Of a DNA stretch of 64,000 nucleotides, positions 6,515 through 60,906 are shown in pieces. Made by a program: the position numbers and the translations under genes. The DNA is from Asterias rubens (Eukaryota). Location: the NCBI RefSeq assembly GCF_902459465.1, contig NC_047067.1:8680001-8744000 (forward strand). Direction: 5' to 3'. Each line of letters begins with the position of its first letter. The stretch's first letter is position 1. The notes below the pieces were generated by a model. It was not told the origin of the DNA. It made no database searches and was given only the letters and a program-made list of their open reading frames with translations.

Positions 6515-6848
6515 TATTAATTTTTTTAAATTGTTTTTATACGCATGTCGCCCAAAACAAGGCTAAAAGCCACGCTAGGTAAACGGGCTACAAGGAAGAA
6601 AACGAAGACATGCAGAGATTCAGTGGAGCTGAAGGTAGGAATTGATATTCCTCTTAAAAGATGGAAGATCATAGGATGAAGGGAAACATGCACCAGGCAA
6701 GGAGTTCCAAAGAGATGCAGTACGAGGGAAGAAGCTACTAAGGTAGCTCTTTTTTCTACATCTCGGCACAGCTACAGTATAAGGATGAGAACAAGCAGAA
6801 AGCCTGGTCTCGCTCTCTATCACTGCAGATAGCACTATACCAAAACGT
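6515..6848 (-). mobile_element. 5'-truncated non-LTR retrotransposon (CR1/L2/Jockey-group) 3' end fragment
   Basis: The minus-strand ORF encodes HPYTV..PRCR..SYLSSFFPRTASLWNSLP..CFPSSYDLPSFKRNIN, a typical LINE ORF2 C-terminus. A short 3' UTR and an A-rich tail follow. Confidence 0.8.
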
Positions 6849-6917
6849 GTGGGATTCAAACCCACGATCCTTGCAATTCTAGAGCAGTGTCTTACCAACT
6901 AGACTACCGAGGTTGCC
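6849..6917 (-). mobile_element. tRNA-derived SINE head
   Basis: Reverse complement GGTAGTCTAGTTGGTAAGACACTGCTCTAGAATTGCAAGGATCGTGGGTTTGAATCCCAC has A-box-like and B-box-like motifs. A second copy lies at about 20815-20915. Confidence 0.7.
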
Positions 6918-7257
6918 TGGTAGCTAGAGGAGCAGTTCGAATTCAATGTTTTGGCAGCGGGTACCGCAACGACCCATACACCGATGTTTGTTAGCGCCAA
7001 ACGATATTGTGCAACTTGCCCATCAGACGGACGAAGCGTGCAGTGTTCACTGGATTGTGAAGAATAACATCCAGTCACCAGGTGAGAGGAGATACTAATA
7101 CAAGAATACCTTATCCTTTCTCCACGGTTGAATGAAAGACAAGCTCAGCACCTACATGTACATACTATTCTCGTAAAGAACCCGGTATTCGTACATACAG
7201 GGGATTGTCTCCATGTAAACCTTGTGTGTGGTGTTGTCACACTGAATGGGTTTCAAA

Positions 7258-10200
7258 ATGACCGTTTCGAGATATTTTGTAGCTGTTTTGGTGGTTGTGT
7301 TCCTCGGCTTGACGTATGCTAATCCCATTGATGGAAATCGCGTCCTCAAACAGTTAGAATCTTTTAGGAAGGCTCAACAGGGACATTTCATCAAAGTTCC
7401 TTCATCTCAACAGAATGGTGAGTTTAACCCAAGTGTTGTAGACTCGAGAGGGGCCGGGTGTGGCCTGGGCCCGATTCCATAAAGCATGTACTATACGTAA
7501 GCACAAACTATGCACAGAAAGACCGTACTCATCAGTTGAAACAGGTTGACATGGTTTCAACCCGGGTCCCCCCTCATTTTTTGCATTTATAAATGCTAAC
7601 CCTGCAATTAATGACAGGGGTGGGGAATGGCAAATGCCTCCTCGTGTATCTAATAAGGGCACGTGCCATCTCCAGACTTTTCTTAGTTCCAAACTCTATG
7701 TTTACTTTGCGACTGATGCACTTTCTCCGCTGACCACTGCCTTTATACGGCCTCCATGGCTAGTTCGAGCTATGATGGTCACTTGATCGTACCCAATTCA
7801 CTATTGTTAAAGGAACTGGACACCTTTGGTAATTGTAAAAGACCAGTATTCTCACTCTGTGTTTCCTTGTATGCATAAAATAACAAACCTGTGAAAATGT
7901 TGACTCAGTATTGGTCATGCCATCGAAGTTGCAATAGAACAATATGGAAGAAAAACAAACCTGTTGCACAAATTTGTGTGCTTTTAGATGCATAATGAAA
8001 GGCTCAATTATTTTGGAGTGAGAAATTAGCTCTTTTTTTAAAAACTACGTTCAGTGGGAGCCGTTTTTCACAATGTTTTATACTCATCAACAGCTCGCCA
8101 TTGCTCGTTACCAAGTAAGTTTTTCAATGAACAGGTTCTATACAAAAACACGAATATGACCCCGTGCTTCACGAACACTGAGCTCACGTGTACGCTGTTA
8201 CGCACAAATAACAGTTTTATTGTCCAATCATTCGCCTCCTTTGACCCCAGTGACGGTGCTTTTTGACCCCAAATTGGCGAACTTTTTGACCCCAGTAAGG
8301 GCGCTTTTTAAGCGTGTGACATCACATGCAAGATGTATAGAGTGTGTTTTGGCGACCCCAACCAGAAACATTCGTCATCGGTTGAGTTGAGCGTTTTCGC
8401 GCGTTCGTTTAAGCGCGGTGACGATGCTGTTCAGACCAACCGGTAACCAACTTGGAGTGCGTTTTGGCGACCCCAACCAAAAACTGTTTCGGTTGTTGGT
8501 CGTTGGTTCTGCTGTTCAGACTGAACGATAACCGAGCTGTGAGCTCGGTTACCGTTTTGGTCGTCAAAACGCACTCCTGGTGAGTCGGTTGGGCTTTGGT
8601 TGGGGTCGCCTAAACGCACTCCTAGTATCTGGTGCATGCTGCCATCTTCAAGTCTCTCATAGGTGATAATCAACCATTGATCTTTTATATTCTTCAGTAC
8701 GATTTTGTTTTCTTTTTACAAAACAGGTGTGTTTTCTATGGTCCAAAGGAAGTCAGATGGTCTATTATCTGGGAATGAAATCACTGCCGAGACAAAGAAT
8801 ACTATGACAAAGGTCTTGCACGGCTCCCTTGTGAACAATATTATAAATAAGCTTCCCAGCGATGGGTCGTCGAATGTTCTTCACATGGGAGGCATCCCTG
8901 AAAGTAACGATGTGGAGCATCACTTTGGAATTGAAAAAGATCAGAATGAAAAGGATGATCTTGATGAATCAGGCCAAGTGATTGGATCTAAATCAGAGTC
9001 TGGTTCAGGATCTGGTTCCGGTTCTGGAAGTGGAGCCAGCATGGGATTGGACACCGACCTGGAGAGTGGATCTGGTTCCGGTACTGGAAGTGGAGACAAA
9101 ATGGGATTGGACCTCGACCTGGAGAGTGGATCTGGTTCCGGTTCTGGAAGTGGTGACAGAATGGGATTGGACATTGACATGGAGAAGGGATCTGGTTCCA
9201 GTTCTGGAAGTGGAGACAGAATGGGATTGGACCTCGACCTTGAGAGTGGATCTGGTTCCAGTTCTGGAAGTGGAGACAAAATGGGATTGGACCTCGACCT
9301 TGAGAGTGGATCTGGTTCCAGTTCTGGAAGTGGAGACAGAATGGGATTAGACATTGACATGGAAAGTGGATCTGGTTCCAGTTCCGGAAGTGGAGACAGA
9401 ATGGGATTAGACATTGACATGGAGAAGGGATCTGGAAGTGGCGACAGAATGGGATTGGACCTCGACCTGGAGAGTGGATCTGGTTCTGGCGTTGGAAGTG
9501 GCGACAGAATGGGATTGGACATTGACATGGAGAAGGGATCTGGTTCCAGTTCGCGAAGTGGTGACAGAATGGGATTGGACCTCGACCTTGAGAGTGGATC
9601 TGGTTCCAGTTCTGGAAGTGGAGACAGAATGGGATTGGACATCGACCTGGAGAAGGGATCTGGTTCCGGTTCTGGAAGTGGAGACAGAATGGGATTGGAC
9701 CTCGACCTTGACAGTGGATCTGGTTCCAGTTCTGGAAGTGGAAACAGAATGGGATTGGACCTCGACCTTGAGAGTGGATCTGGTTCCATTTCTGGAAGTG
9801 GAGACAGAATGGGATTAGACATTGACATGGAGAAGGGATCTGGAAGTGGCGACAGAATGGGATTGGACCTCGACCTTGAGAGTGGATCTGGTTCCAGTTC
9901 TGGAAGTGGAGACAGAATGGGATTAGACATTGACATGGAGAAGGGATCTGGAAGTGGCGACAGAATGGGATTGGACCTCGACCTGGAGAGTGGATCTGGT
10001 TCTGGCGTTGGAAGTGGCGACAGAATGGGATTGGACATTGACATGGAGAAGGGATCTGGTTCCGGTTCTGGAAGTGGTGACAGAATGGGATTGGACCTCG
10101 ACCTTGAGAGTGGATCTGGTTCCAGTTCTGGAAGTGGAGACAGAATGGGATTGGACATCGACCTGGAGAAGGGATCTGGTTCCGGTTCTGGAAGTGGAGA

Positions 10201-11977
10201 CAGAATGGGATTGGACCTCGACCTTGAGAGTGGATCTGGTTCCAGTTCTGGAAGTGGAAACAGAATGGGATTGTACCTCGACCTTGAGAGTGGATCTGGT
10301 TCCATTTCTGGAAGTGGAGACAGAATGGGATTATACATTGACATGGAGAAGGGATCTGGAAGTGGCGACAGAATGGGATTGGACCTCGACCTTGAGAGTG
10401 GATCTGGTTCCATTTCTGGAAGTGGAGACAGAATGGGATTAGACATTGACATGGAGAAGGGATCTGGAAGTGGCGACAGAATGGGATTGGACCTCGACCT
10501 TGAGAGTGGATCTGGTTCCAGTTCTGGAAGTGGAGACAGAATGGGATTAGACATTGACATGGAGAAGGGATCTGGAAGTGGCGACAGAATGGGATTGGAC
10601 CTCGACCTGGAGAGTGGATCTGGTTCTGGCGTTGGAAGTGGCGACAGAATGGGATTGGACATTGACATGGAGAAGGGATCTGGTTCCGGTTCTGGAAGTG
10701 GTGACAGAATGGGATTGGACCTCGACCTTGAGAGTGGATCTGGTTCCAGTTCTGGAAGTGGAGACAGAATGGGATTGGACCTCGACCTTGAGAGTGGATC
10801 TGGTTCCAGTTCTGGAAGTGGAGACAGAATGGGATTGGACATCGACCTGGAGAAGGGATCTGGTTCCGGTTCTGGAAGTGGAGACAGAATGGGATTGGAC
10901 CTCGACCTTGAGAGTGGATCTGGTTCCAGTTCTGGAAGTGGAAACAGAATGGGATTGGACCTCGACCTTGAGAGTGGATCTGGTTCCATTTCTGGAAGTG
11001 GAGACAGAATGGGATTAGACATTGACATGGAGAAGGGATCTGGAAGTGGCGACAGAATGGGATTGGACCTCGACCTTGAGAGTGGATCTGGTTCCAGTTC
11101 TGGAAGTGGAGACAGAATGGGATTAGACATTGACATGGAGAAGGGATCTGGAAGTGGCGACAGAATGGGATTGGACCTCGACCTGGAGAGTGGATCTGGT
11201 TCTGGCGTTGGAAGTGGCGACAGAATGGGATTGGACATTGACATGGAGAAGGGATCTGGTTCCGGTTCTGGAAGTGGTGACAGAATGGGATTGGACTTCG
11301 ACCTTGAGAGTGGATCTGGTTCCAGTTCTGGAAGTGGAGACAGAATGGGATTGGACCTCGACCTTGAGAGTGGATCTGGTTCCAGTTCTGGAAGTGGAAA
11401 CAGAATGGGATTGGACCTCGACCTTGAGAGTGGATCTGGTTCCAGTTCTGGAAGTGGAGACAGAATGGGATTAGACATTGACATGGAGAAGGGATCTGGA
11501 AGTGGCTACAGAATGGGATTGGACCTCGACCTTGAGAGTGGATCTGGTTCCAGTTCTGGAAGTGGAGACAGAATGGGATTGGACCTCGACCTTGAGAGTG
11601 GATCTGGTTTCGGTTCTGGAAGTGGTGACAGCATGGGATTGGACATTGACATGGAGAAGGGATCTGGTTCCGGTTCTGGAGGTGGCGACAAAATGGGATT
11701 GGACCTCGACCTTGAGAGTGGATCTGGTTCCAGTTCTGGAAGTGGAGACAGAATGGGATTGGACATTGACATGGAGATTGGATCTGGTTCCAGTTCTGGA
11801 AGTGGAGACAGAAATGGATTGGACATTGACATGGAGAAGGAATCTGGTTCCGGTTCTGGAAGTGGTGACAGAATGGGATTGGACATCGACCTTGAGAGTG
11901 GATCTGGTTCCGGTTCTGGAAGTGGCGACATAATGGAGAGTGGATCTGGCAGCGGCCGCGGAGTTGGCCAGGATTAA
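7258..11977 (+). CDS. Gene A: secreted Ser/Gly/Asp-rich tandem-repeat protein (serglycin-like/proteoglycan-core-like), join(7258..7417,8727..11977), 1136 aa
   Basis: caaaATG at 7258 opens a signal peptide MTVSRYFVAVLVVVFLGLTYA-NP. The GTGAGT donor at 7418 (phase 1) and the ttttacaaaacAG acceptor at 8725-8726 (phase 1) join it in frame to the 1090-aa ORF. The total of 3411 nt is a multiple of 3, and AATAAA follows the stop. Confidence 0.9.
7807..8125. mobile_element. Partial Kolobok-type MITE, K1-related (intron of gene A)
   Basis: Left TIR TTAAAGGAACTGGACACCTTTGG and the shared internal sequence. The right end is missing. Confidence 0.7.
8454..8625. mobile_element. Short MITE in the gene A intron
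   Basis: TIR GGAGTGCGTTT(T/A)GGCGACCCCAACC. An extra TIR copy lies at about 8340-8365. Confidence 0.65.
9041..11930 (+). repeat. Coding tandem repeat: about 50 units of 60 nt or 48 nt encoding MGLD(L/I)D(L/M)E(S/K)GSG[xxxG]SGDR
   Basis: Units counted from the translation. All length variation is in multiples of 3, so the frame is preserved. Confidence 0.97.
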
Positions 11978-12108
11978 ATGATAATACATGTAGCTTTTTT
12001 AGTGTGATTTAGGGGGTGCAATAGTATGCTGAATATTAGTTTACACGTCTTGGTTTTTATTGAGTTAGTTCTTATGCTAAAACACTCGATGATCCCATGG
12101 TTCTGAAG

Positions 12109-12114
12109 AATAAA
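12109..12114 (+). terminator. Putative polyadenylation signal of gene A
   Basis: AATAAA about 130 nt after the stop codon. Confidence 0.5.
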
Positions 12115-13112
12115 AAATGCAGGTGAAACAATTTATGGGCATTGTTAAGTATCGGCCGCGATCACCTGATCTGCCATACTACTTCTGTTTTGTAACTTCC
12201 ACTGGGTTATTCAATTCATTCAAGGACAGATCTTTTGAGGGTGGCAATTATAAATTGCAGAAATAAAAGTCCCTCGGGATCGATAATGTGCTTCATTTCA
12301 CATAGCTGCAGCGTATAGCCAGTTGTTTTTGTCAAGTTAGCGTTGATGTATCCGGCAGGATATTTTGCTGACTAAACAGGAGATGGAGATGTTTTTGCTG
12401 AGCAAAATGTGATCACTGAAAAGGGAGCAGGCACCAGTCGCATCCATTTGTGTTTTGGTTGGGCTTGTAGCCGGTTCCTTCTGCTCAGTGTGAAATTTCA
12501 TTGTTAGGCAATTTTTCTATGCCAGGATTTATTCGAGCCCTTGCATGACGTCATAAGCTCAAACAGCGTAGCAGATTCAATTTTTGGGATGGGGCATAAA
12601 AAATGACATCTTTTTACATAACCACATTACTTCGAAGTGAAACGTTTCCAGATTTTTTTTTAAAAATGCGATTGAAATATGCTGTATAGGCGTACTAAAC
12701 CACAGTTTTTATTGCCATTGAGTTTAAGAGTGATTACCAAACGTACTACCTTCCTTGAACAAGATGTGTAGCTTTTTATTAGTTTCTTGTGTGTAAAAAC
12801 ACTATATCTTGTAGAGAGTGGACAGAGAACTGTCAAATTATGTTCTTTTACTTCTGTATTTTCACAGAGAGTCATAGAACAGACTTTATTATATGAAGTG
12901 GCACTGACCAGTACCAAAAACGTGTAGCCAGTGACTCTGCAAGCTATACCAATGTTTAAAGTCACCTCTGGAAATAGAATTTTTGTTCTTTCAAACATAA
13001 GAGTATATGCTTACGAACAATAAAACAATTTTTTTAGTAATTGTTTGTCACGATTTATATGTTTAAAAAATATATAAAGTTGTTTGGGGGGCTGACTCCG
13101 CCTACCCCTTTT

Positions 13113-49000: not shown

Positions 49001-52000
49001 TTTTCGCAATTTCGACGACCAATTGACGTTGAGAGATACACCAAGTGAGAAGACTGGTCTGTGACATTTCCCAAAGTTGCCCAGTGTCTTTAACCATACA
49101 TGCAGTGATGTCCAGTGTCTTATACGGAATTAACAATACGCAACTCTCTCGCCTTCAACGATTACAGAATATTGCAGCAAGGATGATCACTCACACCAAG
49201 AAAACGGAACACATCACACCAGTGCTAGCCGGCTTGCACTGGCTCCCCATCCAACAAAGGGTTAAATATAAACTGTGCCTCATTATTTTCAAGATCTTGC
49301 AAGGTGATGCCCCAGCATATTTAAGTGATCTTGTGCAGATATACACCCCAGGACATCGTGGCTTACGGTCTACAAAACACAAACTCCTCAAGGAAAAAAC
49401 AACTAAACATGTATGGGGGGAGAAAAGTTTTCAAAGCGCAGCACCAAAGCTTTGGAACTCCCTCCCGGACACTGTGGAACTCTCCAAATCACTCAACACA
49501 TTCAAGAACAGTTTAAAAACTCATTTTCATAGAGAAGCTTTTCATGAAGTTTATTTTCTTATTTTGTTGTTTGCTACTTTCATTGCTTGTTGTTCCTTTG
49601 TAGAGTAGCGCCATGAGCGCCGCTTGCGGCAGATACCGGCGCTTTATTAAGTGTCCATTATTATTATTATTATTTAACCATGCGTGTAGTGATGCAATGG
49701 CTCAGCATTAAACTTAAATCCACCTGTCGTTCTTGTGCGTCTCCTAAGGTGCCTCTTCACTTCCTGATCAAAGTGACGGCAAGCGATGAAAACTGCCACC
49801 GACCTGGTTTCGTCAATCCAACCCCTGATAATGGAGAGTGTTTACCTGCGGCAGTCGATCAACCTAAGACGATTCGTCTCGCTGCAAGGAGTGAAAACTC
49901 CCAGTATGTGTAAGTTCTAATTATGCATGAACTCCAGGTTGGACTGACACACCCCTTGGTGACTCTTGTCAGTACTTGGCAAACCTGTATTGTTGATGTA
50001 TTTTCTGCTTTTTTGGATTCACACTTTTTACTGCCTGCCCCTTTTAAAATTGTGTTGTTACTTCGTCAGATGCTTCGCCACAACCGTATTATACTAAATT
50101 AGAGAAGTAATTTAGATGGTGTTTCCAAATATCTGAGAAGTATGAAGGAAAAGTCACAATTTTGAACTTTCCTTCAAATATGTCTTCATAGTTTAGACTT
50201 GTTTTCCTTACTGTTTATCGGTAATGTTAATATTTTTCTTAAAAGCACTTTCAGTGAAGGTATTTTCTTCCTAGGAAGTCATTTGTAGAGCCTTGTTTTA
50301 AGAAGTATGAAGGAAATGTCAGAAGTTGAAATATCCTCAGTAAAGACTTTATAATTTAGACTTGTTTATTTCGAATTTAAAAGCACTTTCAGAGAAGCCA
50401 TTTTCATTGTTTACCAATGTTTCATCGCATTTTTCCCCCTGCCATAAAGCATCACAGGCATATCTACTTTCGGACTTCCTCTGGGCATGGAAGTAACACC
50501 CCTGACCTCTGACCCAGCCGACCCCATGACCTTTTATGTTGACCTCCAGTGGACTCCGCCTCAGTCTCAGAGAGGACCTCATCACATCTGCTTCTCAGCG
50601 TTTGACCAAAAAGACGATCATGAGTATGTATTGAGCTTATAAATCCAGTTTTTCTACCTTAAACAAAAGTTTTTGTTTTTGATTTTTCTTCATTTAGGAG
50701 AAGAGTGCTGTGTAATAATGATATAAGTTTTTCTCATTCCACTATCAAACAAACTTGACTTCAAAAATCAGTATTGAAACAATACCAGGTTGAATTTTGA
50801 ATTTCTCCTTTTTTGTTGCAGGTTTGCTTCAGATCAAGTTTGCATAACAGTCCATGTGGGGGGTAAGTCGCTTTTAAAAATAATATATTGGAATTACCGA
50901 ACACTGAAATTAAGATGGTTTGTGACTTTTTCTTTCTCATTCCGAGAGTTACAAAGTATTTTACCCATAATATGTAAATTTAGAACCACCAGGTAAACTG
51001 AATGGGTAAACTTCCAGTAAAAACCGGGGTTGTCAAAGAAAAAATACCTAAAGATTGGACTGAAACCCGAGACCTATGTGCCGACACTTATCCAACTGAG
51101 CTATTCTGCCCTTTTTGAACTAGAAAGCTCAATTGGTTGAGTGTGGGTCTGTTAATCCGAAGACCACGGGTCCAAGTCCTTGTCAAGTCCACTTCTATTC
51201 GTTCAACCCAGCCAATATTTTCCTTTGCTAAAGCAGTTTAAGCAGTGCGTTTAAAGGAATGTTACAGAATTGGTAAGTCACAAAAATTGTGAAGAACACA
51301 GATTTACATAAAACTTACACGGTCTAATGATGATGATAGTTAAAAACATCCCTTGAAATATTTCTGTCTGAAATGTCATATTTGATGAGAAATAAATAAT
51401 CTAACTTCGCGTTTGGAGTTTATCGCTCAGTGAGCGCTTTATTTATTTTTATTTTGGTACAATGCAATGCAAAATTTGTAATCGGTTTTCACTATTTTCT
51501 CGTGACCCAGATGGCCGATCAATCTCAAACTTCCACAGGTTTGTCAGTTTATGTATATGGTGGATAACAGAAAGTGCTTACACTGCCAGCAACTTTTTTG
51601 TTAGCAAAAACCAATTCTGTAATGTTTCTTTAACAAACAAAATATATTTTTTGTAAAAAAAAGTTAATGGCCTGACATTTTGACCGTGTTTGCAGTGTTT
51701 AAAATTTTAATGAGTTACTAAATTACTGTTTTGTTTTTTGGTCAGCTCTTGCTACACACCCTGTGCCAGAGCTTTCCAGACCACATGAAGGAGAAGAAAT
51801 GGTTTCCATCTTCAATGAAGAGTGGGAGATACAGTTTGATTCCTCGGTAAGTTTCACTCTCAGAAAACTATCCTAAATAATACAGGGTTGAACCAAAGGC
51901 AAATTGTCAGTTACAGGTTGTTTAGCTTGTCTAGAGTGAGACTCCGTTTTCCTCTTTTCAGATAACACAACACGCAACAAGCGAGGGGGCTATAGTCTCA

Positions 52001-55000: not shown

Positions 55001-58000
55001 AAAGTTTTTCCAAAAAATAATGTCTTCCCACAGAAATTCAAGATTGAAAACAGTACACACTGCAAATTGCGTTATATTTTTTTTAGTGTGAAAAAATACG
55101 GTACACAGCATTGTGACCTTTGTCAACAATGCGGTATCCGGTTCGGCGCTTGCAATAAACAATGTGGTATTGAAAGGGTTAAACACACATTGGATGTATT
55201 AACTATAGCAATCTATGAGTTAATGTACGAAAGAATCTCAACAAAATTAACAAAAGCTACACAAAATGGAAGTTGAAGTTTAAGATTTGAAACATGCCAT
55301 TCAGGAATTAGATTTTGATAGGGTAAAATGTCTCAACCAATTCTTTCAATCATCATTTGACTACATCACTCACGACACCTTGTTGTTATAGTTAAACTGA
55401 ATTAAACTAGATAACTAGTTTACTCTTGTATCCTCCAATCCAAATGACAAAGATCTTCTTGGATGATACATCCAATGAATCATGTAAGTTACAAATTCAT
55501 GTGAGAGATCAAAATATTGTTGTTTGTGACTTGTTGAAATGAACAATCAATGTTTTGACTCACAACATTTTTATCAAATTCAGTGAAATTTTTTGGGTGT
55601 AATTTTATGCTCTGAAGTGATGCAAAACTGATGTCTTTTTGTTGAACTTGATAAAATCACAAGGGGTCGAAAATTGGCAATAATTTGATCGAATCATAAG
55701 GGGTAAGACTTGACTTATTGTCAAAAATGGGCTCAAATTTGATAAAATCACAAGGGGTTTTACCTTGCATTTGTGTTGAAAATAGGTGAAAAATTGATAA
55801 CATCATAATTATTGTTGTTGAAAATAGGCAAAAAATATTTAAAATCATTGCACTTTTGTTGAAGTAATAACAAGGGGTAAATCTAGCATTTTTCGCTGAA
55901 AATTTTGATTACATCAAAAGGGGTATGTATGGCAGTTGCATTTTGATAAAAATACAAGGGCTAAGCCTTGCATTTTTGTTGAAAATAGGTGAAAAAAACT
56001 GATAAAATCATAAGGGGTAAGCATTGCATTTTGGTTGAAAATAGGTAAAAATTTGATAAAACCGCAAGGGGTACTGCCTTGCATTTTGGTTGAAAATAGG
56101 CGAAAAATTGATAAAATTATAAGGGGTAAGCCTTGCATTTTTGTCAAAATTAGGATTAAATTTGATAAAAATATAAGGAATAAGCCTCGCAATTTTGATG
56201 AAAATAGGCAAAAATTTGATAAAATCACAAGGGGTAAGCCTTGCATTTTGGTTGAAAATAGGCGAAAAATTTATAAAATCATGCCTTGCATTTTTGTTGA
56301 AAATAGGTGAAAAATTGATAAAATCACAAGGGGTAAGCCTTGCATTTTTGTTGAACATAAGCGAAAAATTGATAAAGTCATAAGGGGTAAGCATTGCATT
56401 TTGGTTGAAAATAGGTGAAAATTTGATAAAATCACAAGGGGTAAGCCTTGCATTTTGGTTGAAAATAGGCGAAAAATTGATAAAATTACAAGGGGTAAGC
56501 CTTGCATTTGTGTTGAAAAAGGGTACAAAATTGATAAAATCATAAGGGGTAAGCCTTGCATTTGGGTTGAAAATAGGTGAAAATTTGATAAAACCACAAG
56601 GGGTAAATAAGCCTTGCATTTTGGTTGGAAATAGGTGAAAATTTGATAAAATCACAAGGGGTAAGCCTTGCATTTTGGTTGAAAATAGGCGAAAAATTTA
56701 TAAAATCATGCCTTGCATTTTTGTTGAAAATAGGTGAAAATTGATAAAATCACAAGGGGTAAGCCTTGCATTTTTGTTGAACATAAGCGAAAAATTTATA
56801 AAATCAAAAGGGGTAAGCCTTGCATTTTGGTTGAAAAATAGGCAAAAATTTGATAAAATCACAAGGGCCTTGCATTTTTGTCGAAAACAGGCTTAAAATT
56901 GATAAAAATCATAAGGGGTAAGTCTTGCATTTGTGTTGAAAATATGCATAAAATGATCAAATCACAAGGGGTAAGCCTTGCGTTTATTGTTGAAAATATG
57001 CAAAAATTGATTGATAAAATCGTAAGGGGTAAGCCTTGCATTTTTGTTTAAAATAGGTGAAAATTTGATAAAACCACAAGGGGTAAGCATGGCATTTTTG
57101 TTTAAAATAGGTGAAAATTGATAAACCCCAAGGGTAAGCCTTGCATTTTGGTTGAAAAATAGGTGAAAATTTGATAAAATCACAAGGGGTAGCCTTGCAT
57201 TTGTGTTGAAAATAGGTAAAAAAATTGATAAAATCATAAGGGGTAAGCCTTGCATTTTGGTTTAAAATAGGTGAAAATTTGATAAAATCACAAGGGGTAA
57301 GCCTTGCATTTTTGTTGAAAATAGGAGAAATTTTGATAAAATTACAAGGGGTAAGCCTTGCATTTGTGTTGAAAAAAGGTAAAAAATTGATAAAATCATA
57401 AGGGGTAAGCATTGCATTTTTGTCAAAATTAGGAATAAATTTGATAAAAATATAAGGGACAAGCCTTGCGTTTATTGGTGAAAATATGCAAAATTTGATA
57501 AAATCACAAGGGGTTATTAGCCTTGCATTTTGGTTGAAAATAGGCGAAAAATTTATAAAATCATAAGGGGTAAGCCTTGCATCTTTGTAAAAATTAGGAT
57601 TAAGTTTGATAAAAATATAAGGGATAAGCCTTGCGTTTATTGTTGAAAATATGCAAAAATTGATAAAATCAGAAGGGGTAAGCCTTGCATTTTTGTTGAA
57701 AATAGGTGAAATATTTATAAAATTGTAAGGGGTAAGCATTGCATTTTGTCAAAATTAGGATTAAATTTGATAAAATCAAAAGGGGTAAGCATTGCATTTT
57801 GGTTGAAAATAGGTGAAAATTTGATAAAATCACAAGGGGTAAGCCTGGCATTTTGGTTGAAAATAGGCGAAAAATTGATAAAATCATTAGGGGTAAGCCT
57901 TGCATTTTTGTCAAAATTAGGATTAAATTTGAGAAAACTAGAAGGGATAAGCCCTGCATTTATGTTGAAAATAGGCACAAATTTGATAAAATCACAAGGG

Positions 58001-60906
58001 GTAAGCCTTGCATTTTGGTTTAAAATGGGCAAAAAATTGATAAAATCATCAGGGGTAAGCCTTGCATTTTTTTTTAAAGTAGGCAAAAAAATTATAAAAT
58101 CGCCAGCCTTGCATTTTTGTCGAAAATTTGACTCAAATCTGATAAAATCACAAGGGCCTTGCAGTTTTGTCAAAAATAGGCGACAATTTGATAAATCATG
58201 AGGGTTATTTCAAACATTTTTATCAAATTTAAGTCAATTTAAAAGTTGTGATTTTAGGCTCTATAATGATGCAGTATGCTTCATTGATGCCTTTTCATGT
58301 ACATGTTATGTATATAGGCTTTAGTTTCAGAAATATTATGTTGAAATTAGGCCAAAATCTGAAACAATTACTAGGGGTAATCCTTTTTTTGCTCTAAAGA
58401 GATGCAGTATGCTTCCTGATGCCTTTTTGTGCCAAGATGTAAGCTATATTTTGAGACATTTTGTTAATTTTGTTTCCACGCCGAATGAAAAGGGTAACCA
58501 ATTGAAAAAATCATAAGGGGTCACAGTCCAGCATTTTTATTAAACTTCGGCAAATTTTTAATGTGTGATTATTTATGCTCTAAGTTGATGCAGTAGGGTT
58601 TTCTGATGCCTTTTTTTAGTTGTGTGTTTCACTGACATCTTGGTTTTGTCGTTTCACTCCATAATAGATGCAAAGTGGATGACACAGTGGAGTTCCATTC
58701 CCATCCTAGTAGTCTGCGACAGAGATTCTCTATCGAGGCCTTTGCATTCCTAGGAGAGAACCTCCATGGATCGGTAAGACAGGCTTTTTGCTTACAGACA
58801 GGCACGCCAGAGTCGCACCAACTTCAGATAAGGAGCAACTCTAGGCCAACCCAAATAAATTTTTTGTTTTAGACAGGTGAACTCAACCTAACATTTACGT
58901 TAGGTTCAGCTCATGACAAGATCGACGTCTGAAACCAAGGTCCTCCAGAGTCGTACCGACCGACTACAACAGTCGATCTTTCGGCTTCTAGCTTGTCTAG
59001 TCGCTCCCAACTGTTTCAGACGTCGATCTTTTATTCAGAATTTGGTTCGGTGCAACACTGGAGCGCCTGTCTGAAACAAGGTAAAGTTCCTGTCCTGGAA
59101 ATTTAAAAAAAATCCTATTCGAGTTTTGATAAACATTTGGTTACTACACTGAAATTTCTTTACCGAACATCGCATTTTATAAGAGTGTATTTCTATGGTG
59201 TTTCCCGGATCCTATTCGGACCAGACAGTAATCAAACCATGGCATGTACTCATTTCAACACCTGGGTGGAATCTCTGATACAAACTCTCACATAAAAATA
59301 TTTGTAAACCTGGTTTGAGAGAAGGAAATTATGGCAAGTGTGTTGCTCATGATAACCTGTTGTGTATTTGATGTTCACTGTGACATAGTGACGTGTCATG
59401 CTGCAGACTCTGAATCCATGTTACAAACTCTCACATCAATTCTATGTAAACCTGGGTGGACAGTGGAGAGAAGCAAATTATGGCAAGTGTTGCTCACGAT
59501 AAACCCTGTGTGTATTTCATGTTGAAGGTGTTTGTTCACTGTGACTGTGCCGACTCTGACTTTGTTACAAACTCTCACATAAAATTATTTGTAATCCTGG
59601 GTGGAGAGAAGCAGTTTATGGCAAGTGTGCTGCTCATGATATCCCATCGTGTGTTTTATGTTGAAGGTGTTGGTACACTGTGACATAGCGACGTGTCACG
59701 GGACAAACTGATTACAAACTCTCACATGAAATTATTTGTAAACCTGGCAGAAAAAAACAAATTATTGCAAGCTGTGTTGTATTTTATGTTGTAGGTATTT
59801 ATTCACTGTGACATAGCGACGTGTCACGCGGTCGACCTTCAATCTCCATGCGCAAGGGGCTGTCAAGACTCGTCTGTCATTTCAAGGAGGGATGTATCCC
59901 AGTCTGGTTCATCTTCCAAGGCCTACCCAAACACAGACGGACCCATACGGATCAGGACCGGGGATAAAGGTTGGTGTTCATTTTGATCTAAATATGATGT
60001 ACATTAATAAAAAAAAAGGAACACAGTGGATAACTGGACCCAATTTCATAGCGCTGCTTTAACAAAAAGCACATTTGTTTTACTGTTGCAGAAAATGTTG
60101 CTGAGGTGTAAAACGTATTTCACAAGTTAGTAAGAAAATTAGGCGGCCATTTTGCACATTCACCATGGATTTGTATTGTTGTTATCATTCACTTTCCTGC
60201 AGTAAGCACCGGTAGGTTAGCATGCCTTTCGTGTGCTTACGGTAAGCAGCGCCTTGATTCAGAAATCGTACAGTAAGTACAAAATTGGCCGCTAAGCAGC
60301 TCTAAGAAATTGGGCCCTGTACAGGAAACCTAAACCAATTGCTTTACACTATTTCAAAGCAAAATATTTTCAAAACAATGTCTTTTGCTAAAAAACAGGC
60401 ACTCTAAGCTTATTAATCCACATTCAATAATGTCAGAGCACAAAACGTTCTCACAAACTAGTGAGCTTATTAAATTTAAAGTATACAAAACAACAAAATT
60501 TGATTGGCAAAATGACTGATTTTTTCCCCCCGGATGTCCTTTCAATCAATTTGGTACTTTTGTAAAAAGTGCCACGTGAGAACATTTATTTGGGGAGATG
60601 GGGGTCCATATCCCCATAACACCCCTTCGCAGAGCCAAAGCTTTGGTCATTACACCCTTGTCAGTAACTTGTTATCTTTTCTTTAATTCAGTGCCTTGGA
60701 ACCCAATCTCAGCCTCTAGAGACTACTTCAACTTCTCCTATGTGGAGTTACCGATGCTGACGGCCACCGTCATTCTACTGTTTGTCATCTTGATCGTCTT
60801 AGTACGAGCTCTCAAAGCGATGAGGCGGCACAAGAAAGACTCGCCCTCCTACCCTCATCGCGTGGATCGACTCAAGCTACCGTCTATCAGGATACCTGAT
60901 GAGTAA
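40015..60906 (+). CDS. Gene C: ZP-domain type I membrane/secreted protein, paralogue of gene B, 887 aa; join(40015..40137,46415..46662,47726..47910,48311..48420,48657..48764,49749..49909,50450..50623,50822..50862,51746..51846,51962..52226,52651..52892,53581..53990,58668..58773,59795..59969,60692..60906)
   Basis: All 14 introns are GT-AG with matching phases, and the total of 2664 nt is a multiple of 3. Motifs seen: signal peptide MGISPLFLMCVVGLLVLHRVGA then SHFRGGIITW, CCW, NSSP, VSDPDGDVVRCRF, IEDF..PLSRVPLHF, and an Ig-like end HEWHFTTG. The ZP region has LDSCRATP, GCKVDDTV, RQRFSIEAFAF and VFIHCDIATC. These are followed by SRRD, the EHP-like GPIRI, and the TM segment MLTATVILLFVILIVLV. The donor of exon 6 could alternatively be at 49904 (same phase). 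Confidence 0.87.
41761..42122. mobile_element. Kolobok-type MITE, K1-related
   Basis: TTAAAGGCATGGACAC...AATAGTGTCCACTGCTTAA with the shared internal CAGAGGGAGCCGTTTCTCACAATG. Confidence 0.8.
44411..44898. mobile_element. Ginger-like MITE, same family
   Basis: GGGG-TGTCGCATGCAATT...AATTGCACCTGACA-GGGG. Its interior is the reverse complement of the 36025-36500 copy. Confidence 0.75.
46249..46353. mobile_element. 105-bp Tourist/Harbinger-type MITE (H2)
   Basis: About 40-bp TIR GGCC(A/G)TGTCCGAATTGGCGACTT(C/T)GGCTACAGCTACAGCT with TAA TSD on both sides. Related degenerate copies lie near 27756-27850 and 44945-45095. Confidence 0.85.
46711..47098. mobile_element. Kolobok-type MITE, family K1
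   Basis: TTAAGACAGTGGACACTATTGG...CCAATAGTGTCCACTGCCTTTAA. Confidence 0.85.
48915..49094. mobile_element. Partial Kolobok-type MITE, K1
   Basis: Internal K1 sequence ending CCCAGTGTCTTTAA. Confidence 0.7.
49099..49672 (+). mobile_element. 5'-truncated L2-type LINE (RT C-terminal fragment) in intron 5 of gene C
   Basis: The ORF has LQRLQNIAARMIT..EHITPVLAGLHWLPIQQRVKYK..AAPKLWNSLP..FKNSLKTHF. There is a GCGCTTTATTAA motif plus an (ATT)n tail. A 9-bp target-site duplication TTTAACCAT lies at 49090-49098 and 49673-49681. Confidence 0.9.
51052..51183. mobile_element. Two divergently oriented tRNA-derived (SINE-head/pseudo-tRNA) sequences
   Basis: Minus strand: TAGCTCAGTTGG...GGGTTTCAGTCC. Plus strand: AAGCTCAATTGG...CTGTTAATCCG...GGTCCAAGTCC, with an Asn-like GTT loop. 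Both are degenerate. Confidence 0.5.
51251..51633. mobile_element. Kolobok-type MITE, family K4
   Basis: TTAAAGGAATGTTACAGAATTGG...CCAATTCTGTAATGTTTCTTTAA. Confidence 0.8.
53050..53303. mobile_element. Harbinger-type MITE H1
   Basis: GACCCAATTCTATAGC...GCAGCTCTATGAAATTGGGCC. Confidence 0.7.
54118..55182. mobile_element. Non-autonomous piggyBac-like element (about 1.06 kb)
   Basis: TTAA-CCCTTTCAATACCA...TGGTATTGAAAGGG-TTAA: 14-bp perfect TIR, CCC/GGG ends and TTAA TSD. No transposase ORF. Confidence 0.8.
55650..58205. repeat. About 54-bp AT-rich tandem satellite (roughly 45 copies) in gene C intron 12
   Basis: Consensus GATAAAATCACAAGGGGTAAGCCTTGCATTTTGGTTGAAAATAGGTGAAAATTT. The copy number is estimated from span divided by unit length. 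Confidence 0.95.
59270..59835 (+). repeat. About 145-bp tandem repeat x4 spanning the intron 13 acceptor and the start of gene C exon 14
   Basis: The anchor TACAAACTCTCACAT recurs at about 59279, 59421, 59565 and 59712. Each unit ends in a CACTGTGAC exon-start copy. Confidence 0.85.
60037..60316. mobile_element. Harbinger-type MITE H1
   Basis: CTG-GACCCAATTTCATAGCGCTGC...GCAGCTCTAAGAAATTGGGCC-CTG. Confidence 0.8.

What the first reader, a model, noticed from the sequence alone, without database searches (positions are those of the whole stretch)
7258..11977. Secreted, Cys-free, 1136-aa protein made of about 50 acidic Ser-Gly cassettes: candidate extreme proteoglycan core or phosphoserine polymer
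Seen: a signal peptide, a short unique pro-region with two RK dibasic sites, then about 50 units of MGLDxDxE(S/K)GSGxxxGSGDR. Each unit has about 4 acidic residues next to 2-4 Ser-Gly dipeptides, and the mature chain has no Cys. Established: Ser-Gly repeats flanked by acidic/hydrophobic residues are the xylosyltransferase signal for glycosaminoglycan attachment (serglycin, syndecans), and acidic Ser tracts are also secretory-kinase (Fam20C-type) substrates. Inference: well over 100 potential modification sites would make a bottle-brush polyanion for jelly, mucus, adhesive or mineral matrix. I do not recognise it as a described family.
Basis: partly seen in the sequence, partly recalled or inferred. 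Interest (0 to 1): 0.8.

Follow-up and report, generated by a model that had tools for sequence, protein, structure and literature searches.

The report
Secreted acidic Ser-Gly repeat protein
A sea-star gene, confirmed here as spliced and transcribed, encodes a secreted, disordered, very acidic protein of about 50 near-identical 16-20-residue cassettes packed with Ser-Gly sugar-attachment-type sites; it is probably the core of a lineage-specific proteoglycan, but no modification, tissue or relative could be shown.

Summary
The two exons 7258-7417 and 8727-11977 (+) join in frame to give 1136 aa. There is a classic signal peptide, about 140 unique residues, and then 50 MGLDxDxE-(S/K)GSG...GSGDR cassettes. 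The protein has no Cys, 190 Ser-Gly and 130 Gly-Ser-Gly, net charge -131 and pI 4.05. The GT..AG junction 7417/8727 appears in contigs of three sequencing runs from two organism labels. A fourth run covers the intron and looks like DNA.

AlphaFold2 predicts disorder, and Pfam finds no domain. Searches of three very large protein collections, the ESM Atlas and metagenome contigs gave no credible relative.

The glycosaminoglycan-core reading fits published xylosyltransferase rules: Ser followed by Gly, acidic surroundings, an unstructured chain. GSG motifs in engineered secreted linkers are known to be xylosylated. The Fam20C phosphoserine reading is weakened, because the S-x-E motif is completely absent (about 13 expected by composition).

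Blocks of 0.5-1.2 kb within the array are 98-100% identical, so the array expanded recently and its copy number may be variable or uncertain in the assembly. Tissue of expression, actual modification and orthologues in other species remain unknown.

Verdict: a real orphan gene and a plausible but untested proteoglycan core, analogous to serglycin or the aggrecan CS1 domain. Moderate interest.

The parts
7133..7257 (+). 5' untranslated region (approximate transcript start)
   Evidence: The spliced RNA contig of run X4 (record 24) starts at 7133. There are short upstream ATGs at 7156 and 7213 and an alternative in-frame ATG at 7246.
7258..7417 (+). Exon 1 coding part: signal peptide and start of the unique N-terminal region (53 codons plus 1 nt)
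   Evidence: ATG in an AAAATGA context, GTGAGT donor at 7418. Covered by RNA contigs of X1, X2 and X4.
7258..7320 (+). Predicted signal peptide MTVSRYFVAVLVVVFLGLTYA (21 aa), cleavage after TYA
   Evidence: Read from the sequence: a basic n-region (R5), a 12-residue hydrophobic core, and small residues at -3/-1. No predictor was run.
7418..8726 (+). Intron 1 (1309 nt, GT..AG, phase 1), full of high-copy interspersed repeats
   Evidence: The joint 'skips 1309, GT..AG' is seen in X1 and X4, and the same junction in X2 record 9. Word depth of 1e4-1e6 over 7759-8172 and 8380-8655 in all runs marks dispersed repeats.
8727..11977 (+). Exon 2: the rest of the coding sequence, including the TAA stop at 11975-11977
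   Evidence: The only + frame open throughout; the other + frames break every 114-170 codons.
8727..9007 (+). Unique region: second RK site, one weakly predicted helix, an acidic stretch, then an SG run
   Evidence: Translation. AlphaFold2 helix at exon-2 residues 20-40 with pLDDT 50-61 only. No homologue found.
9008..11944 (+). Array of about 50 cassettes MGLD(L/I)D(L/M)E(S/K)GSG...GSGDR. Type A (LDLE-S, 20 aa) and type B (IDME-K, 16 or 20 aa) alternate. Higher-order blocks of 516/576/624/1200 nt are 98-100% identical.
   Evidence: TRF, unit list, lag-identity profile, codon usage.
11978..12530 (+). 3' untranslated region (at least this far)
   Evidence: Runs X4 and X8, of which X4 carries the spliced form, hold 100% of the sampled words of 11930-12530; X5 and X7 hold 93%. 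AATAAA at 12109, 12262 and 13019.

Best explanation
This is a real, transcribed, two-exon, lineage-restricted sea-star gene. Its product enters the secretory pathway through a cleavable signal peptide. The mature chain is a soluble, intrinsically disordered polyanion of about 109 kDa before modification.

The most likely working, which is inferred and not shown, is this. In the Golgi, peptide O-xylosyltransferase xylosylates a subset of the 190 Ser-Gly serines. The best candidates are the one or two G-S-G sites per cassette that lie just after the D-x-D-x-E patch. Some of the linkers are then extended into chondroitin/dermatan or heparan sulfate chains.

The conserved amphipathic acidic motif MGLDxDxE would supply the acidic patch that the enzyme's positively charged cleft prefers. 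It would also space the chain clusters 16-20 residues apart, as in the 19-residue repeats of the aggrecan CS1 domain.

The result would be a bottle-brush proteoglycan that binds water and cations in an extracellular matrix, mucus, adhesive or secretory granule.

The array grew by recent unequal crossing-over of multi-cassette blocks, so copy number is probably polymorphic.
For: Shown:
- In-frame two-exon ORF of 1136 aa.
- Splice junction in contigs of three runs under two organism labels, and absent from a DNA-like run.
- 3'UTR held by the same runs.
- Signal peptide read from the sequence, with no second hydrophobic segment or GPI-like tail.
- Disorder: mean pLDDT 41.7.
- 190 SG against 62 expected; 130 GSG; 113 SG serines with an acidic residue within -5..-1; net charge -131.
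- Ser and Gly are encoded by mixed codons (AGT, TCT, TCC; GGA, GGT, GGC), so the SG runs are not a simple microsatellite.

From the literature:
- XT1 needs Ser with Gly/Ala at +1, prefers acidic neighbours and extended, unstructured substrates. All but one known GAG site has Gly at +1 (PMC5992326).
- Basic residues lower XT1 activity and acidic residues raise it (PMC13038410).
- GSG in engineered secreted linkers is commonly xylosylated, up to about 30% in HEK cells (PMC5240648).
- An insect xylosyltransferase accepts model vertebrate HS/CS peptides (PMC3173866 abstract).
- Echinoderms have chondroitin synthase and EXT genes and carry sulfated chondroitin on collagen fibrils, yet lack aggrecan, versican and decorin (PMC10381214).
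- Asterias rubens adhesive cells and footprints stain for sulfated proteoglycan or polysaccharide (PMC6262867). The 2022 footprint-protein catalogue never mentions a proteoglycan (PMC9382459).
Against: - There is no direct evidence of any modification, no proteomic evidence of the protein, and no tissue information.
- Every cassette ends in Arg/Lys, and type B cassettes carry Lys right before the first SG. Basic residues depress XT1 activity.
- Only 83 of 190 SG serines have an acidic residue upstream and no K/R within +/-3.
- XT specificity was measured on the human enzyme, not a sea-star one.
- Differences within the array show no clear excess of synonymous change: 924 synonymous against 2199 non-synonymous codon differences, and third-position diversity only slightly higher. 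Three of the five differences between runs in the unique part are non-synonymous. Selection on the exact sequence is therefore not demonstrated.
- No orthologue outside near-identical organisms was found, so conservation cannot support function.
Confidence: 0.5

Rival explanations
1. An acidic, cation- or mineral-binding matrix protein that works without GAG chains. The alternating hydrophobic/acidic L-D-L-D-L-E strands, joined by flexible Ser-Gly loops, would bind Ca2+ or calcite surfaces in the stereom skeleton, or act as a high-capacity Ca2+ buffer. Ser phosphorylation could occur by a non-S-x-E route.
For: - 47 D-x-D-x-E motifs, net charge -131, pI 4.05.
- Asp punctuated by Ser-Gly recalls the mollusc shell protein Aspein, and echinoderms have acidic repeat phosphoproteins such as phosphodontin. 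Both comparisons rest on my own knowledge and were not tested here.
- Sea stars have a calcite skeleton.
Against: - Asp is only 13.5% of residues, far below Asp-rich shell proteins.
- There is no S-x-E site at all, and no D-x-D-x-D-G calcium loop.
- AlphaFold2 sees no beta structure or beta-roll.
- An unshielded chain with 130 GSG motifs passing through the Golgi would be expected to be xylosylated anyway.
Confidence: 0.2
2. A polyprotein precursor cut at the single Arg/Lys ending each cassette. It would release about 50 copies of 15-19-residue acidic peptides, by analogy with echinoderm egg-peptide precursors whose copies are separated by single Lys residues.
For: - 48 unit junctions have R or K immediately before the next MGL.
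- There is a signal peptide and a short pro-region with two RK sites.
- The speract precursor offers a precedent; this is my own knowledge and was not checked here.
Against: - There are no dibasic sites between cassettes; only two exist, both in the N-terminal region.
- Only 9 of 48 junctions have the extra basic residue at P4/P6/P8 that is usual for monobasic processing.
- There is no Gly-basic amidation signal.
- The would-be peptides are low-complexity, vary in length and resemble no known bioactive peptide.
Confidence: 0.05
3. A young orphan gene whose repeat array is a largely neutral, recently expanded coding minisatellite. The protein is made and secreted, but the cassette number and sequence have no specific function.
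For: - Blocks of 516-1200 nt are 98-100% identical.
- There is no synonymous excess within the array.
- The unique region changes mostly non-synonymously between runs.
- No homologue was found anywhere.
Against: - Contig depth is high in several independent runs: 496 in X4 and 120 in X2.
- The frame is intact through 3.2 kb, although the two other + frames are broken.
- All length variants are multiples of 3. This is weak evidence, since the 48-nt variant was copied with its block.
- The stop codon lies right at the end of the array.
Confidence: 0.15

Closest known systems
Serglycin (secretory-granule proteoglycan core)
   Same: Overall plan: a signal peptide, a short unique N-terminal part, then a Ser-Gly repeat region as the main body. 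It is soluble, with no folded domains. The SG repeats sit in an acidic context.
   Different: There is no sequence relationship: no Pfam family hit at E<=1. Serglycin has one uninterrupted (SG)n run of about 8-24 pairs in a core of about 150 aa (my own knowledge). Here, 50 cassettes each combine an amphipathic acidic motif with 2-4 SG, in 1136 aa.
Aggrecan CS1 chondroitin-sulfate attachment domain (lecticans)
   Same: Tandem units of about 19-20 residues, each with about two Ser-Gly sites. The array is encoded in one large exon and has variable copy number. It produces a bottle-brush.
   Different: No G1/G2/G3 globular domains (Link, C-type lectin) are present. Echinoderms are reported to lack aggrecan, versican, brevican and neurocan genes (PMC10381214). 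The unit sequence is unrelated.
Caenorhabditis elegans chondroitin proteoglycans CPG-1 to CPG-9
   Same: A precedent for invertebrate proteoglycan cores that are lineage-specific and unrelated to vertebrate cores, found only by biochemistry (PMC2063922, listed).
   Different: No sequence similarity was detected. Those cores were proven to carry chondroitin; this one is only predicted.
Acidic repeat biomineral proteins (Aspein, phosphodontin, phosphophoryn)
   Same: Secreted, disordered, acidic and Ser-rich tandem repeats.
   Different: Those are dominated by Asp or by S-x-E/phosphoserine motifs (my own knowledge). Here Asp is 13.5% and S-x-E is absent.
Engineered (G4S)n linkers in secreted fusion proteins
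   Same: The G-S-G motif in a flexible chain passing through the secretory pathway is documented to receive O-xylose and xylose-based glycans (PMC5240648; PMC12567180 abstract).
   Different: These are artificial, mostly xylose-only and at low occupancy. They lack the acidic patches thought to favour full GAG priming.

Membership tests
Proteoglycan core protein (functional class: xylosyltransferase-primed GAG carrier) | Enters the secretory pathway | tested here: met
   N-terminal signal peptide read from the sequence, with no other hydrophobic segment. No dedicated predictor was available.
Proteoglycan core protein (functional class: xylosyltransferase-primed GAG carrier) | Acceptor Ser followed by Gly (or Ala), in an acidic, unstructured context | tested here: met
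   190 S-G and 130 G-S-G. 113 SG serines have D/E within -5..-1, and 83 of those also lack K/R within +/-3. Disorder by AlphaFold2. Rules taken from PMC5992326.
Proteoglycan core protein (functional class: xylosyltransferase-primed GAG carrier) | Covalently attached glycosaminoglycan chain on the native protein | not testable with these tools
   Needs lyase digestion or glycoproteomics of sea-star material.
Serglycin family (Pfam Serglycin) | Sequence homology to serglycin | tested here: not met
   Pfam scan of exon 1, the unique part and the whole of exon 2 at E<=1 gave no family, except a sub-threshold ApeC match (13.3 bits against a cut-off of 26.5).
Lecticans (aggrecan/versican) | Link-module G1 domain and C-type lectin G3 domain flanking the GAG region | tested here: not met
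   No Pfam domains and no Cys at all.
Fam20C-type secretory phosphoproteins | S-x-E (or S-x-pS primed by S-x-E) target motifs | tested here: not met
   0 S-x-E, against 13.3 expected and a minimum of 5 in 2000 shuffles. Only 45 S-x-D/E sites, 44 of them S-G-D.
Repeated-peptide (neuropeptide or egg-peptide) precursors | Copies flanked by dibasic sites or rule-conforming monobasic processing sites | tested here: not met
   No dibasic site between cassettes. 9 of 48 junctions satisfy the P4/P6/P8 basic rule.
Mucins (PTS-domain O-GalNAc glycoproteins) | Pro/Thr/Ser-rich tandem repeats | tested here: not met
   Pro 4 and Thr 8 of 1136 residues.
RTX / beta-roll calcium-binding repeats | GGxGxDxUx nonapeptides folding into a beta-roll | tested here: not met
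   No Pfam hit. AlphaFold2 gives no strands and pLDDT of about 40 over the cassettes. This was a single-sequence model, so it is a weak test.

The most novel reading that the evidence does not exclude
This orphan may be the missing core protein of one of the sulfated proteoglycans that histochemistry and electron microscopy have long seen in echinoderms, but that no gene accounts for. One candidate is the Alcian-Blue-positive scaffold of the sea-star tube-foot adhesive footprint. The other is the chondroitin-sulfate proteoglycan that bridges collagen fibrils in mutable connective tissue. If so, it would be a convergent, domain-free counterpart of aggrecan or decorin. It might pair electrostatically with the strongly cationic secreted repeat proteins noted elsewhere in this genome.
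Probability: 0.12. Interest if true: 0.7.

Novelty: new variant of a known kind. Interest (0 to 1): 0.45.

Why it matters
A published review (PMC10381214) reports that echinoderms lack the classical matrix proteoglycan cores (aggrecan, versican, decorin) yet possess the GAG-synthesis enzymes and GAG-decorated collagen fibrils. Sea-star adhesive footprints also contain sulfated proteoglycan-like material whose carrier is unknown. A highly expressed secreted protein that is essentially a string of about 50 xylosylation-type cassettes gives a concrete, easily tested candidate for such a carrier. It would also be an example of a proteoglycan core invented afresh within one lineage. If it is not glycanated, it is still a clean natural model of a long, Cys-free, acidic Gly-Ser polymer passing through the secretory pathway. 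That bears on how cells handle GSG linkers.

Tried and rejected
**Homology searches**
- The unique 100 residues against 5.8 billion clusters: no hit.
- Cassette region, residues 95-500: none of the 8000 candidates scored.
- A 300-aa N-terminal piece, to catch short or partial models: only P0002-P0005. These are 348-452-aa 'TGSGxG' repeat proteins from ENA/Logan assemblies with 24-38% identity. I judged them compositional matches.
- phmmer of the 94-aa unique part against 1.84 billion representatives: only P0001, a Thr/Ser-rich mucin-like repeat protein from an unidentified animal assembly. Its E-value of 2e-9 comes from summing nine repeats of about 25 bits each, with pairwise BLASTP E of 4e-4 to 1e-2. 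I rejected it as homology.
- ESM Atlas: best score 0.75, below the level reached by shuffled proteins.
- Two metagenome-contig scans, one with the unique part and one with cassettes: nothing confirmed.
- Exact-product look-up of the exon-2 ORF: not on record.

The gene's own product never appeared in any of these protein searches. The collections therefore seem not to hold a model of this gene, and absence of orthologues carries little weight.

**Other checks**
- No paralogue in the window by tblastn.
- Literature: cassette peptides occur in no full text. No supplements are held for the sea-star footprint proteome.
- Starfish egg-jelly ARIS was considered as an identity. It carries O-linked sulfated fucose-rich glycans, and nothing links it to this protein.
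- The minus-strand 847-aa ORF and the other + frames were rejected as coding. The GT..AG splice fixes the + strand, and only the SG frame joins exon 1 and stays open.
- Tissue of expression could not be obtained because run metadata are coded.
Full report
**1. What is in the sequence**

The + strand carries an ATG at 7258 in an AAAATGA context. It opens a 160-nt coding exon that ends at 7417 and is followed by a consensus donor, GTGAGT. A polypyrimidine-rich acceptor...ttttacaaaacAG, places the start of exon 2 at 8727. G7417 plus GT8727-8728 form a Gly codon, and the frame then stays open to TAA at 11975-11977.

An in-frame ATG at 7246 would add MGFK. Two short upstream ATGs lie in the 5'UTR.

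The product begins MTVSRYFVAVLVVVFLGLTYA|NPIDG. This has a basic n-region, a 12-residue hydrophobic core and small residues at -3 and -1, which I read as a cleavable signal peptide. No predictor was available. There is no later hydrophobic segment and no GPI-like tail, so the protein should be soluble and secreted.

**2. The repeats**

- Tandem Repeats Finder reports one array at 9008-11944, with period 60, 50.7 copies and score 3590.
- Split at [M/N]GL, there are 50 cassette starts. Forty units have 20 residues and nine have 16.
- Two types roughly alternate. Type A is MGLDLDLESGSGS(S/G/I)(S/V)GSG(D/N)R. Type B is MGLDIDMEKGSGS(GSGS)GDR.
- A lag-identity profile shows blocks of 516, 576, 624 and 1200 nt that are 98-100% identical. 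The array therefore grew recently by duplication of 9-20-cassette blocks. Its copy number is likely polymorphic, and the assembled number is not certain.
- Ser is encoded by AGT/TCT/TCC and Gly by GGA/GGT/GGC in fixed positions of the unit. The Ser-Gly runs are thus not a hexanucleotide microsatellite.

**3. Composition and motifs**

- Residue counts: G 280, S 252, D 153, L 120, M 72, E 60, R 51. There is no Cys or Trp, and only 4 Pro and 8 Thr. There is no N-x-S/T sequon.
- The mature chain is 1115 aa and 109 kDa, with net charge -131 and pI 4.05.
- SG dipeptides number 190, against a shuffle mean of 62 and maximum of 84. G-S-G occurs 130 times.
- 113 SG serines have D/E within -5..-1. 122 have no K/R within +/-3. 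83 satisfy both conditions.
- S-x-E occurs 0 times, against 13.3 expected; no shuffle fell below 5. D-x-D-x-E occurs 47 times and D-x-D-x-D-G 0 times.
- The only dibasic sites are RK at residues 37-38 and 61-62.

**4. Is it a gene?**

Contigs of four public runs were laid on 7000-9060.

- Runs X1 and X4 (organism label A) and X2 (label B) cover the exons and not the intron.
- All three carry the exact junction. The joint table lists 'skips 1309, GT..AG' for X1 and X4. X4 record 24 is 657 nt at depth 496 and runs 7133-7416 joined to 8726-9060. X2 record 9 is 463 nt at depth 120 and joins 7265-7419 directly to 8729-9036.
- Run X3 covers the exons and the unique parts of the intron at an even depth of about 11-46, so it behaves as DNA.
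- The orientation of GT..AG fixes transcription to the + strand. That disposes of the 847-aa ORF on the minus strand.
- The other two + frames are interrupted every 114-170 codons.
- Runs X4 and X8 hold every sampled word of 11930-12530, and X5 and X7 hold 93%. X4 shows the spliced form; the others' word shares over 7200-9010 fit a transcript. The 3'UTR is therefore at least about 550 nt. AATAAA lies at 12109, 12262 and 13019.

Translation itself has not been shown.

**5. Evolutionary signal**

Within the array, codon differences between 20-residue units are 924 synonymous against 2199 non-synonymous. Diversity is only slightly higher at third positions, at 2.38 against 1.84 and 1.10. Much of this reflects the A/B type difference, and concerted evolution blurs the rest, so no purifying selection can be claimed.

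Five differences were seen between runs in the unique parts. Two are synonymous (N27, one Glu) and three are not (R28S, T->I, N->I). The unique region looks weakly constrained.

**6. Relatives**

- Pfam gives nothing, apart from a sub-threshold ApeC match.
- Three word-indexed searches of 5.8 billion clusters were run.
- One exhaustive phmmer run covered 1.84 billion representatives.
- The ESM Atlas was searched.
- Two metagenome scans were run.

These gave only compositional matches. P0002-P0005 are TGSGxG repeat proteins. P0001 is a mucin-like protein whose nine repeats each align at about 25 bits.

The gene's own product was not returned either, and the exon-2 ORF is not on record. These collections apparently hold no model of this gene, so 'no orthologue' is weak evidence. 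There is no paralogue in the window, and the flanks for about 7 kb on each side hold no obvious gene.

Earlier notes of this scan name the genome as the starfish Asterias rubens. I did not verify this independently.

**7. Structure**

A single-sequence AlphaFold2 model of the first 413 residues of exon 2 has mean pLDDT 41.7 and pTM 0.18. It shows one low-confidence helix at residues 20-40 of the unique part and no secondary structure in the cassettes. This fits an intrinsically disordered chain. It gives no support for a beta-roll or solenoid, though a single-sequence model is a weak test.

**8. Mechanism**

Published work on human xylosyltransferase 1 establishes several points.

- The enzyme requires Ser with Gly or Ala at +1. 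[quoted passage not shown]
- All but one known GAG site has Gly at +1 (PMC5992326).
- Basic residues lower activity and acidic residues raise it (PMC13038410).
- G-S-G motifs in artificial Gly-Ser linkers of secreted proteins are commonly O-xylosylated, by about 30% in HEK cells. In the same study, the phosphorylation of one linker was attributed to a fortuitous S-x-E site (PMC5240648).
- An insect xylosyltransferase accepts vertebrate model peptides (PMC3173866 abstract), so the specificity is probably old.

Each cassette here offers D-x-D-x-E immediately upstream of S-G-S-G, in a disordered chain that must traverse the Golgi. I therefore consider xylosylation of at least some sites likely, and elongation to GAG at some of them plausible.

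The Arg/Lys at each cassette end, and the Lys before the first SG of type B units, should reduce usage of the neighbouring sites. Sterics would limit occupancy well below 190.

**9. Rivals**

I weigh three rivals.

- An unglycanated Ca2+- or mineral-binding acidic matrix protein (0.2).
- A monobasic-cleaved polypeptide precursor (0.05). Only 9 of 48 junctions fit the usual monobasic rule, and there are no dibasic sites between units.
- A largely neutral, recently expanded orphan (0.15).

**10. Comparison with the known**

In plan, the protein resembles serglycin (signal peptide, short N-terminal part, Ser-Gly body). In unit size, site density and likely copy-number variation, it resembles the aggrecan CS1 domain. 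It is a member of neither family: there is no homology, no Link or lectin domains, and no Cys.

[quoted passage not shown] They nevertheless have chondroitin synthase and EXT genes and show sulfated chondroitin along collagen fibrils of mutable connective tissue (PMC10381214).

A. rubens adhesive cells and footprints stain as sulfated proteoglycan or polysaccharide (PMC6262867). The 2022 catalogue of footprint proteins does not mention a proteoglycan (PMC9382459). Unassigned proteoglycan cores therefore exist in sea-star biology. This gene is a candidate for one, but nothing here ties it to a tissue.

**11. Verdict**

The GAG-core reading is compatible and favoured, and the phosphoserine reading is disfavoured.
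- In kind, it is a new, lineage-specific variant of the Ser-Gly proteoglycan-core design, unproven biochemically.
- Interest is moderate. Secreted low-complexity orphans are common in this genome, and other notes of the scan list several. This one is unusually clean and well expressed, and it makes a concrete hypothesis testable with a lyase digest and a blot.

Noticed in passing
window 7759-8172 and 8380-8655 (inside intron 1): These stretches have summed contig word depths of 1e4 to 2.6e6 in all four runs, RNA and DNA alike, with many partial joints. They look like very high-copy interspersed elements (SINE/MITE-like). A 22-nt unit is repeated about three times at 8240-8309.
   Followed up: no
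window 55942-58195: A second large tandem array with a 54-nt period, 42 copies and 79% matches. It is AT-rich (GC 0.31) with strong GC skew (+0.39). Long open frames on the minus strand read ...ARLTPCDFIKFSPIFNQN.... It lies near the 'decoy exon' finding at 59270-59835 and could be a satellite or a coding repeat.
   Followed up: no
window 6620-6898 (-) and 49045-49608 (+): ORFs resembling the C-terminal tail of a retrotransposon-type protein, sharing the ...LWNSLP... motif. They are probably dispersed non-LTR element fragments. One sits about 240 nt upstream of this gene's transcript start.
   Followed up: no
window 7156, 7213, 7246: The 5'UTR holds two short upstream ATGs; the one at 7213 is followed at once by TAA. 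An alternative in-frame start at 7246 has a weak context and would add MGFK to the signal peptide.
   Followed up: partly
P0001 / locus L001:2001-4694: An 897-aa mucin-like protein from an unidentified animal assembly (ENA ERZ25072740), next to a nidogen G2F-domain gene. Its roughly 76-residue repeat contains ...ETTLVGTATLHGSSANDILNYSSTD.... This aligns at 35-45% identity with residues 12-40 of the unique region here, the same stretch that AlphaFold2 models as a weak helix. I judged it chance amplified by nine repeats, but did not exclude a shared short module.
   Followed up: partly
runs X1-X26: Near-identical sequence is held under at least four organism labels (A-D) and in one marine metagenome. 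Label B differs by about 1% in the exons, so the gene exists in at least one very close relative or a divergent population.
   Followed up: partly
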